A DNA stretch of 63,228 nucleotides, counting the filler, from Octopus bimaculoides (taxonomy: Eukaryota), in the NCBI RefSeq assembly GCF_001194135.2. It is 3 parts of 3 records of this genome, joined end to end, with 100 filler letters (N's around TTAATTAATTAA, not from the genome) between each part and the next. Parts side by side here need not be neighbours in the genome. Positions count along the whole stretch, not along the records: positions 19,098 to 46,065 come from NC_068981.1; 2 more parts are not named here. One strand, 5' to 3'. The first letter of the stretch is position 1, and each line of letters opens with the position of its first letter. The translations under genes were made by a program, and so were the position numbers. Positions 24,405-36,357 of the stretch are shown here, piece by piece. The notes below the pieces were generated by a model. It was not told where the DNA came from and did not search any database. It worked only from the letters and a program-made list of their open reading frames with translations.

Positions 24405-25128
24405 TCGATCGACTTTTCCAACCGGTCAATCGCTGGTTCAGAGCTACGGTTGTACTATACCTCTGTTAATAAATGTTTCTCTGTGCCTTTGGCGTATAGG
24501 GAGGAATTTCAACCATGTTTCGTGGTCTGCTACCAGAACAGCTCCTTTATAGGATCCAGTTAGCTGAAGACATCATCAGGAGGAACCACGTCCGGTTTCG
24601 GTCCCTACTCCTCTACCGTTTTGACGTGGCGGGGCCCCTCCTTTCGGAGGTGTCTTCAGCTCTGGTGTTGGGTGCATGTCTTCTTTCTTCTATTCCCTGG
24701 CCTCTTCGATGCAGCATCAACGAGTGTCAGCGTCCGACTGATCGTCGTGTCAAGTTCCCCTTTTTATATCTGCTGCTAGGCTCCAGCAGGCAGCCCCAGC
24801 TAGTTGTCACGTGACACTGTCTAAATTTCCCGCTGCTAGGGTCCAGTAGGCAGCACCAGCAAGTTGTCACATGACACTGTCTAAACCTCCCGCTGCTAGG
24901 CCCCAGCAAGTAGTTCCAGCAAGTTGTCACATGACACTGTCATTGTAATTATGGCGTCATTCAAGATCGTAAGACAAAACATAAAGCGTTCTACCTAAGT
25001 TCTCTACCCAGTGTAATCACAAGAATTCAAATATCATCAATAGCCAGCTTAGGAATACAATGTAAAGCAGCGTTATCATATTTAGTGCAGGAAGCATCTA
25101 TTGAGATCCGCGATTTGGTTAGAGCGAA
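24405..25128 (+). CDS. Candidate 231-nt exon split by the 488-bp insertion (24405-24454 + 24948-25128)
   Basis: After removing insert and one TSD: CATAG acceptor, AA|GTAGGT donor, 76 stop-free codons RSTFPTGQSLVQSYGCNYGVIQ...EIRDLVRA, phase 2->2. Confidence 0.35.
24455..24942 (-). mobile_element. 488-bp LTR-like insertion
   Basis: TTGTA duplicated at 24450-54 and 24943-47; - strand starts TG, has 3x60-bp repeats then TATAAAAAGGGG (24757-24768); 3' end lacks canonical CA. Confidence 0.6.
24772..24941. repeat. Tandem repeat, 60-bp period, ~2.8 copies, each with an E-box palindrome
   Basis: GCTGCTAGG...CCAGC.AGTTGTCAC(G/A)TGACACTGTC at exact 60-bp spacing. Confidence 0.95.
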
Positions 25129-25309
25129 GTAGGTGTTGATACATGAGTTGCAAACAGAACGTGATAACTTGTGTTTATAACATGTAGGTCACTTTCACAT
25201 GTTTCTTTGAGGTATACATATAAATGAGTTTATTCAAATAAATACTTATAAAGATGTGAATGTTGTACAATCCGGTATTTTAATCTAATGTTTTTTGGGT
25301 TGTTTTCAG

Positions 25310-25357
25310 TTCCGTATATTTATTGAACTCTAGCCTGGTTAGCTCTCACAAAAATCA
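25310..25357 (+). CDS. Candidate 48-nt exon
   Basis: CTAAT branch-like site, TTGTTTTCAG acceptor, GTAAAT donor; only phase 2 is open, matching the preceding candidate. Confidence 0.3.
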
Positions 25358-27044
25358 GTAAATGTTGTGTTTATAGAAATTTATATCTGGACAAAGTGTT
25401 TTCGGCCTGGTTTGAAACGTCAGTAGTCACTGACTAGACTACATTTGGTCAAAACAACGTGTCTGGCGATCCTTCAGCGTCCTGATCTAGCCCCTGTGGA
25501 TGTAACACACACGTTCTTAGGGAATTTTTTCTGGAGCAAACTATTATGGTGTTTCTGTCCATGCTTATATACACATTATAAACGTTATAAACAGTAATAT
25601 GATTTTCATTTCCGTTCATATTTCTAACTACGAAAGCAAAAGGAACAGTAATACTTACAAAAGCAGAATCACGTGTAAATTTCAGTATATCATACATTTG
25701 CTCACGATATATTTGAATTCACTAATGTTATTCTCTCGATATAATAATAAATATCACGATATTATCATTAGCTTATTAATACTCTCATCTACAAATAAAT
25801 AAGTAAATGTCTAGAACCGCTCTCTGCATAATTTATTTCGAATCACTTGCGTACGTAACTCAAAATGTTTATAAATTCATACGTTTTAAACTAAAAGTAA
25901 ACGAACTACTATAACAAATTCATTTGAACAAATTTTAACCTCATGGTAGAACGAGAGTTGGGAGAGACAAATACATATCACGAATATATAACTTTCACTT
26001 AATTTTGGTCTCATATCTAAAGAGATTTATTACTCTTTTGTTTATTGTATTGTTCTAGAGAGTAAAGATTTGAAGGTGAACGTATTTTCTGGGATGTTGG
26101 TGTATATCGAATTTGCAAAAGGAGAAAACATATATAAACAAATAAAATTTATGACATATTTCATATTTGTTTAAACATTTACAGAGTCAAATGCTTATGT
26201 TCCTTAACATTTCCCTTACTATTAAAACCTGCACGAAAAGAAGATTTCATGAAAACGTGTTTCGTCCAGCAGTTATTCTCAGGTGCAATGAATACATATG
26301 TGAAAGAAAACGTAGCATCTCACGGTGTAAAATCCTAGCCTTCTTCACCTGATAGTTTTAAGAGGAAATGCAGGTTAGTGATTAGTAGAAAATTTCAAAT
26401 TACGAACATCACAAGTTTATGTTTTGTCTGAGTAACACTAAAGATTTATTTTTGTGCAAATTTGCACTAAACTGTTTCAGAATGTTGAAATAAACATACA
26501 CACAAAAGTAAACACTTGGGATGCTTAAATAAATAAATAGTGAGTCTTATAAGCATGCGGTTACAAAGCGCTGAATCTTTGTAGATATACTACATAAACA
26601 TGCAGTGGTATGTGTTAAAGTCGTTAGCACTTATTGTTTTCACGTTGCAGCAGCTAAACAAACTTTTATACATGTCGCAAATGAAAACTTGAACTGACAG
26701 ATGTAAAGTTAAATATTGGTAATTATTTGGGCTGAAGGGAAAAACTCACCGCAGTGGGATCCGAGGTCAGAAAGCTACAAGGCATAATTAAATATACAAG
26801 TAACGATTTCGTAAAATGCTTTACCAATCATAACAATTAATCAGCCATAAACTAGATAGACATAAAGCATTTAGTTGCAGATTTTATTGGCATGGTAATT
26901 GCTAGATTTCAAAGACTTTCGCGCTCAATTTCACTGGATATATTTCATATATGAAGTTACTAAACATTATTTAATTTTCTGTTACGATTTTAAACAAAAT
27001 ATTAGAACTGAAAAACTGGATTCCACTTGTTTGCTTTGTGACAG

Positions 27045-27077: not shown

Positions 27078-28561
27078 GTATGTAGTTAGATGTTAATGAG
27101 TTTAAGAAGATATTCTGATTTAATGATTTCCATTGCGCGTTGAGAATTGCTGGTATTGAAACTGAAGTGAACAGCTCACTTCTAATAAATTGCCAATGCA
27201 TTGAGAAATATTCTTACCAGTCTATGAATTCTGTGCCTATATTTGAGTCTACATACACTACGGATAAGTATTTTAGCTATCAAAATAACATTTCACTGGT
27301 TGCTATTTAAAAATTAGTATTGATTATTTATGTAACATATACTTCTTTTACTATCACCGCATACACATAAATACACACTTGCATACATATATGTGTGTGT
27401 ATAGATGTGTTTGTGTGTGCGTATGTTTATGTTTGCATGTATGTACCTGTATGTGTAAGTGCACGCGCGTGTGTATGCCTGTGTGTGTCTAAGTATGAGC
27501 TGAGTTCATTGATATGTAGAGGGCTTTGATATTATTATTGTTAACGAATTCCATTACAATTCACATACACATGCATGTGTGCGTATGTCCATGTGCGAGT
27601 GTGTGTGTGTGTGTGTGTGTGTATGCGTGCGCGCGCACGTTTAGTACTGCTTTCAACCTAAATAATATCCCGGAGGTTTCATTCCAAGAACGGTTTAATC
27701 ATACAACAGTCAACATCGTAACTAAAAATACATGCCAGAAGCAACATGACTGACTTCCGTCGCTTTTGAAACAGCAGTTGGAAAGAGGATTCCGATTAAG
27801 GAGATATTTTTAGTGAGATGTCTGTTTCATTGATCATCTACGTCATTTGGAACACGTTCACCTCTATTAGCAAATAAAACAAACAATAAATAAATGCATT
27901 CCATTTCTTTCCCTATCTTTCAGAAAATCTGTCGGAGTTACTTATTGTTGCATTGTTTTCACTTTTATTTTTACACATTGAAAGGCACATAATATGATGT
28001 TGCTTTTTATATAATGGAGTATAACTTTGCTAATTCCAATATAATGGAAATAACATCGCTAAATTAGTGCTATATATTGTTTTGGTTAGTCCTTTCAATA
28101 TATCTCAAATGAATGTAATAATGGTGGAGGGTGTTGTATGGTTCCTGGAATCGTAGACGTACCACTGAGAATGTTTTTCTTCTTTCAGTTCATTCAAGTA
28201 AAATGAGCCGGATATTTCAATGGTATAGATTTCATTAGTTTAGAATGCTTATACTACTTTCGGAGAGAATAATTGATATTTCTGTTTTTATTTCACCCGA
28301 TGAAATCTTTCATTGAACTGGTACAAGATCAAAGGTGCTGCAGCCATGACGTCCCGTTTATTTAAGTTATAAGCCAACGAGTAGTTTCCTAGTCTATGAT
28401 TAAAGGTAATATGTGAGGGAGATTGGTTACTAGTAGGTTCGATTCGAACATTTGTCAGAGTGACAGTTAATTACTGTTAGGTGAGTAGGAAATGTGAAAT
28501 TGTTGTGCAATTTTTTAGTGATATCACATGCATAATAATCATTTCTACTATAGGTACACCG

Positions 28562-31388: not shown

Positions 31389-32252
31389 CCCAAAATAACC
31401 AGACGCGCTTTCTGTGGGACAAACCCGCAGTAGTTCAGACTTCCGCCGTTAGAAACCACCTAATGTGACCTTCATACATCACTCTGCCGACCTCCGTCGT
31501 CCATTGGAGCCGTACTGACACGTGATACTTTTTGTTTTGTTTTGTTTTGCGGTTCTTCTTCCTTGTTCGTCGATTTTTGCGATGGCTGAAACGAAGGAAC
31601 AGCGTGTTTCCGTGAAATTCTGTTTTCTGCGGGGAAAACGGCGGCCGAAACAGTTGTTATGCTTCAAGCAGCTTATAAGGACGTTTCCATGCGCAAAACA
31701 TGAATTTACAACTGGTTTCCCCGCTTTAAGAACGGTCAGTTGTAGCTTGAAGACCAGCCTCGTCCGAAAGAATAAAAACATCATGAAAATTATTGAAACG
31801 ATCTTGGACGACCGTCACCAAATAATTGACGAACATCTTGATATGACTGGTGTGTCCTGAAGCACCTACGAACGAATATTGAGTGAGGGATTTTGCAAAT
31901 GAAAAGAGCTGCAGTAAAATCTGCACCTCGCTTACTCACGGAAGATCAAAAGCAGTCACAACTGAATTTGTGTCGTGTACTGAAAGTACAGATGAAAGTT
32001 GATCGCGATGTTTTTTCGAAGGTCATCACTGGTGACGAAATCTGGCGCTATGGAATTCGCAGATGTAGAAGAGGTGAAGAAAAAAAACGACGAGGGTATT
32101 GAAATGCATCACTTGGCAAGAGTCCTAGCACTGGAAAACACCCCTGAAACGATGCATTGTTTAAAATGGAGAACATTTAGAAAGTGATAGAAGTGTAAAC
32201 ATGTAAAACTAAATGAATAAAATACTATTGTAAAATTCCGCGTTCTTTCGTG
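31389..32252 (+). mobile_element. Internally deleted mariner-family transposon
   Basis: MAETKEQRVSVKFCFLRGKTAAET..ML..AY (Mos1-type HTH) from 31582; PRLLTEDQK and VITGDEIWRY; degenerate TIRs next to TA; C-terminal catalytic part missing. Confidence 0.85.
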
Positions 32253-34293: not shown

Positions 34294-35208
34294 CATACAT
34301 ACATACATATATATNNNNNNNNNNNNNNNNNNNNNNNNNNNNNNNNNNNNNNNNNNNNNNNNNNNNNNNNNNNNNNNNNNNNNNNNNNNNNNNNNNNNNN
34401 NNTATACAGTGTATGTGTGTGTGTGAAAAAAAAGGGGTTTCAGGAAACCAGCCGGTTACCTGAGATCATTATTCCTCCTGATCTGGCCAACAGACGGAAT
34501 AGAAAGGAAAGTTATTTTAACCGATAAAATACAAACGCTCCGTCCATGCAATGAAGCCGCGGTAGCTTCGAAGAAGCATAGGTGATTACTAAAAGAAAAC
34601 AAAACCATTACGAAAATATATTCAAAAATGTTCAACATTTAATAACACCATCAGAAAATCGGCTTTCAGACGGTTTTCTGCTAGCTGCTATATGTATGGT
34701 AATTACACACTTGATTCCTAATTTGTACAATGTTTCTGATTTGTTATGCTACCCTAACAAGTACGAAGTCTAATGACTGAGATAAAGGAATAATGACTAA
34801 GATAAAAAATAATTCCAACTATTCTCCCTTATAACAGTTTCTAATGAATACGCCACATTCACGCAACATAAACTATTAAGAAAGCATACGAGTTACATCT
34901 CAGAAAGTTATGCATTTGCAGCAAAATAAATAACTAAATAACTGCCCCACAAATTCTCAATTGTTTACCATACACAGAACCCCCCTCCCCACGAATCCTT
35001 AACTTAAAAAACGACGAAGCAAGGCCAAATGATACAAAAAATGTGATAATACGACTCTCAATACAGGAATAACAAATTCGGCTGAAAAGTGATCTTTTCA
35101 AGAATTATTCACGTAATTTCTACGTACATAAATACGTATACATATACATACTCATATACATATATAATCGTATATCTTATTTATATCTTCTTTTTCTCTC
35201 TCTCTTTA

Positions 35209-35251
<43 letters not shown>

Positions 35252-35369
35252 NNNNNNNNNNATATGTATGTATGTATGTATATATTCATACACACCTATA
35301 AATAATATGTGTGTGTTAATTATTCCTGTATATATCTACAAAACGTTATATAGCATATATAGCTAGTTG

Positions 35370-35410
<41 letters not shown>

Positions 35411-36357
35411 AATGATACATAAAAAAAGAAAGGGAAAGGAAGTTAGAAAAAATGATTTGCTTCAATATGAAGAATAATACTTCGATCGGATAATACATTT
35501 ACATTTCTTCGTTTTTATATCTAAATTATTTTTTTTCCATTCACTTTCGAGAAATGATCTTTTAGGTATATTCAGAAAATCAATAGAGACAACAGATGGT
35601 AAACTGACTTATGGCGGAATGTACATACATACATGCATGCATACATACATACATACATACATACATACATACATACATGCATGCAAACATATATACAAAC
35701 ACACAAGCACTTCCGCGCGTACACAGATATACTTACATATACTCACACACGAGCATTTGCGCCAGTGCATATAAATTGTGTGCGTGCATGTATTTACGCG
35801 TTTGTATGTACGTCTATATATGGACATGGTGGATCTCCGTCGTTCGATGAATACTATTCAGTTATGCGATCATCTTAAAATTATGTCCTTCATTTAATAT
35901 GTAATTCGTTGAGAAGACACATGAGCCTTCAGTTCAACTGTCAATCAGTATAGTATAATGGAGTGTAAACCATTCGAATTAAAGGTACAACACTTCCAGC
36001 GTTCTTCTCTCTAGTTTTAGTCACATGGTGTTTGGTCAACCTATACATTTATCAGGTAATGAGTACGATGTAAGGTGTAGACACCTTCAATTTTGAGGTC
36101 TTTCATGGAGTCTTCACGAAATGACTTGAGCAAACAAGTACATCGAAGTAAGAATATCCTTGTTTGAGGGAAATTACATTTTTTACGTCTCTGAAATTAA
36201 TATACATCTCTCCAGAAAACCTCTCGAAATCTCTGGAATACACCTCGTATCTGGTCTAATTAATGCCATTATTAATGCAACTAAAAAGACCTCCATTGAC
36301 TATTGAAATTCATCTTCTTGTATGCAATATTAGTTCTTTACATATGAATTTATATTC

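What the first reader, a model, noticed from the sequence alone, without database searches (positions are those of the whole stretch)
24405..25128. Removing a TSD-flanked 488-bp insertion restores a 77-codon candidate exon
Seen: TTGTA is duplicated at 24450-54 and 24943-47. Joining the flanks gives a 231-nt stop-free, phase 2->2 segment between CATAG and GTAGGT (RSTFPTGQSLVQSYGCNYGVIQDRKTKHKAFYLSSLPSVITRIQ...EIRDLVRA). The next well-signalled acceptor (25310) is open only in phase 2. Inference: a recent mobile insertion disrupts a coding exon of the + strand gene (a null or exon-skipping allele), or it landed in an older ORF relic.
Basis: partly seen in the sequence, partly recalled or inferred. 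Interest (0 to 1): 0.7.

Follow-up and report, generated by a model that had tools for sequence, protein, structure and literature searches.

The report
Repeat insertion, not a broken exon
A 436-base copy of a very abundant mobile repeat did land here after the species split from a close relative. The "exon" it seems to interrupt is an ordinary chance open frame in untranscribed single-copy DNA, so the finding is ordinary.

Summary
The interpretation mostly fails.

- **Real insertion boundaries.** A contig from a sister species (organism B) carries the empty site. It shows the insertion is 24500-24935 (436 nt), not 24455-24942.
- **TTGTA is not a target-site duplication (TSD).** Both copies are already at the uninterrupted site in B. 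A shared 5-mer occurs in 86% of random window pairs. The real junction has no TSD, only a 6-nt microhomology (ACTGTC).
- **What the insert is.** It is one copy of a repeat present about 2-5 x 10^4 times per genome. One end is fixed at 24500. The other end is truncated relative to other copies. It is most likely a 5'-truncated non-LTR retroposon on the minus strand. It is present in all 8 organism-A samples checked.
- **The open frame.** Correct excision gives an even longer open frame of 105 codons. Eleven stretches at least that long occur in this 27-kb piece.
- **No sign of a coding exon.** B has a stop at the first proposed codon. No RNA reads or contigs cover the flanks. No protein homologue was found.

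One small unexplained hint remains. The right half of the frame shows 5 synonymous against 3 non-synonymous changes.

The parts
24500..24935 (-). The inserted repeat copy (436 nt). It is most likely a 5'-truncated non-LTR retroposon (SINE-like), with its 3' end at 24500 and its truncated 5' end at about 24935-24941.
   Evidence: Organism B's contig runs 24284-24498, then one letter, then 24936-25149. Summed DNA word depth is 1e5-1e6 here, against about 6-55 for single-copy flanks, in organisms A and B. Many other copies end at 24500/24501 with unrelated flanks. Other copies and RNA reads continue past 24941 with a shared sequence, TGAACTTTAACTGACAATGGAGGGCG.
24500..24700 (-). The most abundant module of the element, read as its 3' tail. 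It contains an 11-bp long-range stem (24562-72 / 24651-61) and a CCUCC-GAAA-GGAGG hairpin.
   Evidence: Depth peaks at 24537-24603 and falls to the right. A sister family shares only 24500-24687. The RNA fold is -66.9 kcal/mol, z = -2.9 against shuffles. The inverted repeat is I2.
24772..24941 (.). A 60-nt tandem array of 2.8 units inside the element. Each unit holds the palindrome GTCAC(G/A)TGAC. The last unit is cut off at the junction.
   Evidence: period 60, 87% matches. Joints in other copies show that the unit number varies.
24936..24941 (.). ACTGTC, a 6-nt microhomology at the truncated junction. It fits both the next letters of the repeat unit (ACTGTCTAAA) and the target DNA (ACTGCC in B).
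   Evidence: junction view.
24450..24454 (.). Left TTGTA. This is ordinary flank DNA, not a TSD copy.
   Evidence: It is present in B's uninterrupted site with no change at 24450-54. The chance rate is 86%.
24943..24947 (.). Right TTGTA. This is ordinary flank DNA; B reads TGGTA here.
   Evidence: 24944 T>G in B.
24379..24499 (+). Left part of the chance open frame that spans the true empty site. It covers 40 codons plus the first base of the codon that spans the junction.
   Evidence: A-versus-B changes are 0 synonymous and 8 non-synonymous, including a stop at 24406.
24936..25130 (+). Right part of the same open frame, about 64 codons up to TAG at 25128-25130. It is single-copy, untranscribed and has no homologue.
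   Evidence: A-versus-B changes are 5 synonymous and 3 non-synonymous.

Best explanation
**What it is.** Positions 24500-24935 are one copy of a very high-copy interspersed repeat. It entered single-copy, non-coding, untranscribed DNA in the lineage of organism A after the split from sister species B. It now looks fixed in A.

**Shown**
- The empty site exists in B.
- The exact boundaries are known.
- There is no target-site duplication.
- There is a 6-nt microhomology at the right junction.
- The copy number is high.
- The family has a fixed end at 24500.
- Other copies continue beyond the right end of this one.

**Inferred**
- The element is a non-LTR retroposon (SINE-like) lying on the minus strand.
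- Its cDNA was primed from a break in the + strand after ...GTATAG (24499) and copied from the element's structured 3' tail.
- Synthesis stopped inside the 60-nt repeat array, which is a 5' truncation.
- The free end was joined to the target through the ACTGTC microhomology.

**The open frame.** The insertion disrupted nothing that is expressed.
For: **Empty site**
- B's contig aligns 24284-24498 and 24936-25149 with one letter between.
- Its junction reads ...TTTGGCATATAA|ACTGCCATGGTAATTATGGCGTC.

**Repeat nature**
- Summed word depth is up to 7.6e5 (X1), 1.1e6 (X5) and 3.2e5 (X16), against single-copy depths of about 17, 55 and 6-8. That is about 2-5e4 copies.
- Depth falls from 24537 towards 24938.
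- Loose ends of other copies at 24500/24501 have unrelated flanks, with agreement of only 0.38-0.42.
- Copies run on beyond 24941 with agreement of 0.99-1.

**Age**
- This copy differs from the family majority at 10 or more of 436 sites.
- A and B differ by 5-9% in the flanks.

**Fixation**
- 8 organism-A samples have filled junction contigs at full single-copy depth and no empty-site contig.

**Not an exon**
- There are zero RNA reads on the unique sequence of 23746-27000 in three runs.
- There is no cover in three RNA contig sets.
- RNA runs hold 0.00 of the words of 24948-25350.
- No homologue was found for the 105-aa peptide at E<=10.
- No homologue was found for the 64-aa right half in a full HMMER pass over 1.84e9 representatives.
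- Pfam gave no hit.
- B has a stop at 24406.
- pN/pS over the whole frame is 0.64, p = 0.37.
- 11 stop-free stretches of at least 105 codons occur in the piece.
Against: **On the retroposon reading**
- There is no poly(A) or simple-repeat tail at the proposed 3' end, and no TSD. Classic L1-type features are therefore missing.
- Orientation rests only on the argument that one end is fixed and the other truncated.
- No tRNA, 7SL or 5S head, and no ribozyme, was found. This copy lacks the 5' part, so the element class is not established.
- The partner LINE was not looked for.

**On the chance-ORF reading**
- The right half of the frame shows 5 synonymous against 3 non-synonymous changes (nominal p = 0.015, post hoc split).
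- Up to 5 further A-versus-B differences near 25112-25149 could not be read.

**Limits of the negative evidence**
- The RNA evidence comes from three raw runs of one study, each read to about 6%, plus assembled contigs. Tissue coverage is unknown.
- I could not confirm that the protein databases contain organism A's own annotated proteome. The element's own 104-codon frame also found nothing.
Confidence: 0.85

Rival explanations
1. The insertion split a genuine coding exon of a + strand gene, giving a null or exon-skipping allele.
For: The frame stays open across the true empty site and gets longer, 105 codons. AG and GT dinucleotides sit at 24403-04 and 25129-30.
Against: There is no RNA and no homologue. 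B has TGA at the first codon, and the left half has 8 non-synonymous and 0 synonymous changes. The frame length is ordinary for this piece. The insertion is present in all 8 samples checked, so it is not a segregating null allele. The proposed next acceptor at 25310 lies next to a 6-nt deletion and two substitutions in B.
Confidence: 0.03
2. Only the right half (about 24938-25128) is functional. It would be part of a rarely expressed or unannotated exon, or a conserved non-coding element, and the repeat landed just upstream without breaking it.
For: There are 5 synonymous against 3 non-synonymous A-versus-B changes, pN/pS 0.17, nominal p = 0.015. A GTAGGT donor-like site sits at 25129. Divergence here is about 6%, against about 9% plus indels further downstream.
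Against: The split into halves is post hoc and rests on 8 substitutions. There is no RNA in any run examined. There are zero hits in a full HMMER scan of 1.84e9 proteins. Several differences near the 3' end could not be read.
Confidence: 0.06
3. The element is not a minus-strand retroposon. It could be a plus-strand SINE whose shared head starts at 24500, with this copy 3'-shortened. It could also be another class of element, or a DNA-level capture at a double-strand break.
For: There is no poly(A) tail and no TSD. Falling depth away from 24500 could instead reflect several families sharing a head module. A loosely B-box-like string, GGTTTCGGTCC, is on the + strand (read; it was not scored).
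Against: Retroposed copies keep their 3' end and lose the 5' end. This copy keeps the fixed 24500 end and lacks what other copies have beyond 24941. No tRNA-like head was found by ARAGORN or Rfam. There are no terminal inverted repeats. The termini do not fit Helitron (TC...CTRR) or LTR (TG...CA) ends.
Confidence: 0.2

Closest known systems
SINE/LINE retroposons that share a structured 3' tail ('stringent' type). RTE-derived SINEs are an example. See Ohshima & Okada 2005 and Malik & Eickbush 1998, both seen only as references 39-40 of PMC9115989, so this rests on my own knowledge.
   Same: The family has tens of thousands of dispersed copies. One terminus is fixed and the other is variable. 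The end module is the most abundant part and is shared with a sister family. The tail is structured and there is no poly(A).
   Different: No partner LINE was identified. The head of the element is missing from this copy. No TSD is present. Membership is inferred, not shown.
Unclassified SINE families of octopus genomes. SINEs make up 11.6% of the O. vulgaris genome, and 893 unclassified SINE families have recent copies (PMC13282606).
   Same: It is a very abundant, unclassifiable short repeat with lineage-specific young copies. SINE fragments are common in transcripts (PMC9115989), and reads from other copies of this element are plentiful in the RNA runs.
   Different: The organism of this window is coded and I could not verify that it is an octopus. 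No consensus from those papers was compared with this sequence.
5'-truncated L1 insertions joined by microhomology, and endonuclease-independent L1 insertions that lack TSDs (my own knowledge: Zingler et al. 2005; Morrish et al. 2002).
   Same: The copy is truncated at one end. There are 6 nt of microhomology at the truncated junction. There is no TSD and at most 1 nt of target change.
   Different: Those are mammalian L1 events with poly(A) tails. Here there is no A-tail and the reverse transcriptase source is unknown.
   Same: A mobile element sits inside a long open frame.
   Different: The frame has no transcript, no homologue and no conservation. It is no longer than many chance frames nearby.

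Membership tests
Protein-coding exon | Covered by RNA, with spliced reads at its ends | tested here: not met
   There are zero reads on the unique flanks of 23746-27000 in raw RNA runs X24, X26 and X27. RNA contig sets X28, X29 and X37 give no cover. RNA runs hold 0.00 of the words of 24948-25350.
Protein-coding exon | The encoded peptide has homologues or a known domain | tested here: not met
   105 aa, none at E<=10; 64 aa, full HMMER, 0 hits; Pfam, none.
Protein-coding exon | The reading frame is intact at the orthologous empty site | tested here: not met
   B has CGA>TGA at 24406, the first full codon of the proposed exon.
Protein-coding exon | Excess of synonymous over non-synonymous change | tested here: inconclusive
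   Whole frame: 5 synonymous, 11 non-synonymous, p = 0.37. Left half: 0 and 8. Right half: 5 and 3, nominal p = 0.015, on a post hoc split.
Protein-coding exon | Open frame longer than chance in this sequence | tested here: not met
   There are 45 stop-free stretches of at least 77 codons and 11 of at least 105 codons in the piece.
   Both TTGTA neighbourhoods exist in B's empty site. They lie 45 nt and 7 nt outside the true ends. The chance rate is 86%.
Non-LTR retroposon / SINE | High-copy, dispersed, with unrelated flanks | tested here: met
   Depth ratios give about 2-5e4 copies. Loose-end flanks agree at only 0.38-0.42. There is no second copy in the 27-kb piece.
Non-LTR retroposon / SINE | Fixed 3' end with variable 5' truncation | tested here: inconclusive
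   The end at 24500/24501 is fixed, depth declines away from it, and other copies extend beyond 24941. This fits, but which end is the 3' end was not shown independently.
Non-LTR retroposon / SINE | Poly(A) or simple-repeat 3' tail, and a TSD | tested here: not met
   There is no tail next to 24500 in this copy or in the loose-end consensus of other copies. There is no TSD. Some LINE clades lack both (my own knowledge).
Non-LTR retroposon / SINE | Pol III head (tRNA, 7SL or 5S) or a partner LINE with the same tail | not testable with these tools
   This copy lacks the far end. ARAGORN and Rfam found nothing in what is present. No eukaryotic genome or repeat library is searchable here.
MITE / TIR DNA transposon | Terminal inverted repeats and a TSD | tested here: not met
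   There are no terminal inverted repeats, only an internal 11-nt pair. There is no TSD.
Solo LTR or Helitron | TG..CA ends with a 4-6 bp TSD, or TC..CTRR ends inserted between A and T | tested here: not met
   The termini read GGAGG...CATGAC (reverse complement GTCATG...CCTCC), and the site in B is A|A.
Ribozyme-bearing retroelement (Penelope-like element or retrozyme hammerhead, HDV-like) | Match to a self-cleaving ribozyme model | tested here: not met
   CUGAUGA and GAAAC strings occur on the minus strand. However, Rfam at E<=1 gives no hit inside 24500-24940, and the helix order does not fit by eye.

The most novel reading that the evidence does not exclude
The right half of the open frame (24938-25128) would be a real, lineage-restricted and very narrowly expressed coding exon, or a young orphan gene. 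Its 5:3 excess of synonymous change would reflect selection. The repeat would have landed at its upstream edge and become fixed.
Probability: 0.04. Interest if true: 0.4.

Novelty: already known. Interest (0 to 1): 0.08.

Why it matters
It matters little biologically. A lineage-specific copy of an abundant retroposon in non-coding DNA is routine in a repeat-rich animal genome.

The useful lessons are methodological:
- Short direct repeats picked by eye near a repeat's edge are usually chance.
- The boundary must come from an empty site or from the family's own ends.
- In AT-rich, microsatellite-rich DNA, stop-free stretches of about 100 codons are common.

The locus does give a cleanly dated insertion with an exact empty site, no TSD and a microhomology junction. 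That could serve as one data point for how this repeat family integrates.

Tried and rejected
- **tRNA-derived head.** ARAGORN found no tRNA in the piece.
- **Known RNA families or ribozymes.** All Rfam hits at E<=1 lie on TA/TG simple repeats and fall below the gathering score. None lies in the element.
- **Hammerhead idea.** This came from CUGAUGA and GAAAC on the minus strand. I dropped it for the same reason and because the helix order does not fit.
- **Other copies in the piece.** blastn found none.
- **Element's own + strand frame.** The 104-codon frame at 24500-24811 has no homologue and no Pfam hit, so it shows no sign of coding for a protein.
- **Joined peptide in the full HMMER library.** I searched the right half instead.
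- **A further outgroup.** A search with flank-only words returned only organism-A runs.
- **Organism name.** I could not establish it. Run and organism names are coded.
- **Pfam on 13 other long open frames of the piece.** Nothing credible was found.

Full report
**1. The observation**

TTGTA stands at 24450-24454 and 24943-24947. Joining 24405-24454 to 24948-25128 gives 231 nt, open in one frame (RSTFPTGQSLVQSYGCNYGVIQDRK...EIRDLVRA). CATAG lies before it and GTAGGT after it. The block between is GC-richer: 0.42 in the 1-kb window that holds it (24098-25097), against 0.25-0.32 in the neighbouring windows. It ends in 2.8 copies of a 60-nt tandem unit at 24772-24941.

**2. Where the insertion really is**

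I laid assembled DNA contigs of several public runs on 23800-25800. Positions 24500-24940 carry a summed word depth of 1e5-1e6. The flanks sit at each run's single-copy level, about 17 in X1, 55 in X5 and 6-8 in X16. The block is therefore a repeat of roughly 2-5 x 10^4 copies, in organism A (the source) and in a second species, organism B (run X16).

Many other copies end at 24500/24501 with unrelated flanks; their loose-end agreement is only 0.38-0.42. So the family's own terminus is at 24500, not 24455.

One 447-nt contig from B aligns to 24284-24498 and then directly to 24936-25149, with one letter between. It differs from A by 11 and 13 substitutions in the two parts. Narrow lays gave its junction letter by letter...TAAATGTTTCTCTGTGCCTTTGGCATATAA|ACTGCCATGGTAATTATGGCGTCAGTCAA.... 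This is the orthologous empty site.

The insertion in A is therefore 24500-24935 (436 nt).

**3. The 'TSD'**

Both TTGTA neighbourhoods are present in B's uninterrupted site. The right one reads TGGTA there. The pair therefore predates the insertion and does not abut its ends.

A shared 5-mer between two boundary windows of this size occurs in 86% of random window pairs from this piece. A 6-mer occurs in 44%, and a 6-mer (TGGCGT) is in fact also shared here.

At the true junctions there is no direct repeat of 5 nt or more. The only feature is ACTGTC (24936-24941). It fits both the continuation of the 60-nt unit (…GACACTGTCTAAA…) and the target (ACTGCC in B), which makes it a 6-nt microhomology.

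**4. What the element is**

- There is no second copy in the 27-kb piece.
- There is no tRNA.
- No Rfam family matches at E<=1 inside the element. All Rfam hits in the piece lie on TA/TG simple repeats and fall below the gathering score.
- There are no terminal inverted repeats.
- The termini do not fit LTR or Helitron ends.
- Depth is highest at 24537-24603 and declines towards 24938.
- DNA contigs and RNA reads from other copies run on past 24941 into a shared sequence, TGAACTTTAACTGACAATGGAGGGCG (agreement 0.99-1). This copy is therefore shortened at its right end but complete at the 24500 end.
- A sister family shares only 24500-24687 and then switches to ACTGTTTGTGACTGTTC....

Retroposed copies keep the 3' end and lose the 5' end. 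The best reading is therefore a 5'-truncated non-LTR retroposon (SINE-like) on the minus strand, with its 3' tail at 24500. That tail module folds better than shuffles (-66.9 kcal/mol, z = -2.9). It has an 11-bp long-range stem and a GAAA-capped hairpin. This fits a structured tail of the kind recognised by a partner LINE's reverse transcriptase, which is an inference from my own knowledge of 'common-tail' SINE/LINE pairs.

Against a textbook retroposon, there is no A-tail and no TSD. Orientation and class are therefore inferred at about 0.65-0.7, not shown.

**5. Age and frequency**

This copy differs from the family majority at 10 or more of 436 sites. A and B differ by 5.1% and 6.1% in the two flanks, and by about 9% plus indels further downstream. 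The insertion post-dates the A/B split, unless B lost it precisely.

Eight organism-A samples each give a single contig across a junction. The runs are X1, X3, X5, X9, X6, X7, X10 and X42. The contigs are identical to the window, sit at full single-copy depth, and show no empty-site contig. X4 also shows the filled right junction. The insertion looks fixed. It is not a segregating null allele.

**6. The 'restored exon'**

A's restored frame is therefore longer: 105 codons, 24379..25130 (LQFYIHYHSRSTFPTGQSLVQSYGCTIPLLINVSLCLWRIDCHCNYGVIQDRK...DLVRAK*). Length is nevertheless no evidence here. The piece holds 45 stop-free stretches of at least 77 codons and 11 of at least 105. Markov simulations expect about 14 and about 2.

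- **Sister species.** In B the frame has TGA at 24406, the first full codon of the proposed exon.
- **Substitutions over the whole frame.** There are 5 synonymous and 11 non-synonymous changes, pN/pS 0.64, p = 0.37.
- **RNA.** There are zero reads on any unique sequence of 23746-27000 in three raw RNA-seq runs of about 12 million reads each. Reads fall only on the repeat, and they carry other copies' variants. Three RNA contig sets give no cover. No indexed RNA run holds any word of 24948-25350.
- **Protein homology.** There is nothing for the 105-aa peptide at E<=10 among 5.8 billion clusters. There is nothing for the 64-aa right half in a full HMMER pass over 1.84 billion representatives. 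Pfam gave no hit.
- **Not a TE relic.** The flanks are single-copy, so they are not a relic of a repeated element.

**7. What remains unexplained**

Split post hoc, the right half (24938-25128) has 5 synonymous and 3 non-synonymous changes (pN/pS 0.17, nominal p = 0.015). The left half has 0 and 8. With eight substitutions, a chosen split, and up to five unread differences near 25112-25149, I treat this as a weak hint only. It is the basis of the second rival explanation and of the novel case.

**8. Surroundings**

RNA lays on 38950-43000 show only simple-repeat reads, plus 1-4x cover at 40854-41261. I found no evidence for a + strand gene in the roughly 7 kb sampled. A degenerate mariner-type transposase relic lies at about 31.58-32.1 kb (+) (Pfam HTH_48, E = 4.9e-9).

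**9. Comparison and verdict**

The closest known things are:
- common-tail SINE/LINE retroposons;
- 5'-truncated insertions joined by microhomology that lack a TSD;

The mobile insertion is real but ordinary. The TSD, the boundaries and the disrupted-exon reading are not supported. Interest is low.

Noticed in passing
window 31580-32100 (+): A degenerate mariner-type transposase relic. Its reading frame shifts from +1 to +0 and contains several stops. The read-through translation hits Pfam HTH_48 (Mos1 transposase HTH) at E = 4.9e-9, above the curated cut-off. The word-based homologue search on the single open frame found nothing.
   Followed up: partly
window 40854-41261: Weak RNA cover of 1-4x in three runs, with an odd 50-nt skip joint from 40986 to 41037. 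It overlaps a 128-codon stop-free stretch on the minus strand (40827-41210) that has no Pfam hit. It could be another repeat or a low-level transcript.
   Followed up: partly
window 24938-25128 (+): The right half of the chance frame has 5 synonymous against 3 non-synonymous A-versus-B changes (nominal p = 0.015, post hoc). The left half has 0 against 8. This is unexplained and the sample is small.
   Followed up: partly
window 24670-24690: Many DNA copies and abundant RNA reads leave this element's sequence here for ACTGTTTGTGACTGTTCTAATTCAACTGTG (agreement 0.97-0.98). This points to a sister, well-expressed repeat family that shares only the 24500-24687 module.
   Followed up: no
window 24757-24941 (minus strand): Read on the minus strand, the 60-nt units each carry the palindrome GTCAC(G/A)TGAC. 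Downstream of them comes ATATAAAAAGGGG (24757-24769). Other copies have a CCAAT-containing stretch further upstream (loose ends). This layout looks like a promoter, but its function was not tested.
   Followed up: no
window 25274-25407: DNA depth is 3-5 times the single-copy level in organisms A and B, which indicates a low-copy repeat just downstream of the finding.
   Followed up: no
window 25297-25314: Organism B has a 6-nt deletion at 25297 and substitutions at 25306 and 25314.
   Followed up: no
window 21800-23520, 27360-27640, 35100-35880, 38750-38870 and others: TA/TG/CA microsatellite-like tracts give many sub-threshold 'miRNA' hits in Rfam (mir-297, mir-466, mir-5014 and others). All fall below the gathering scores and are artefacts of simple sequence. 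These tracts also inflate the count of long stop-free stretches.
   Followed up: yes
The likely cause is long (TC)n or (CA)n tracts. RNA evidence for this part of the piece is therefore missing.
   Followed up: no
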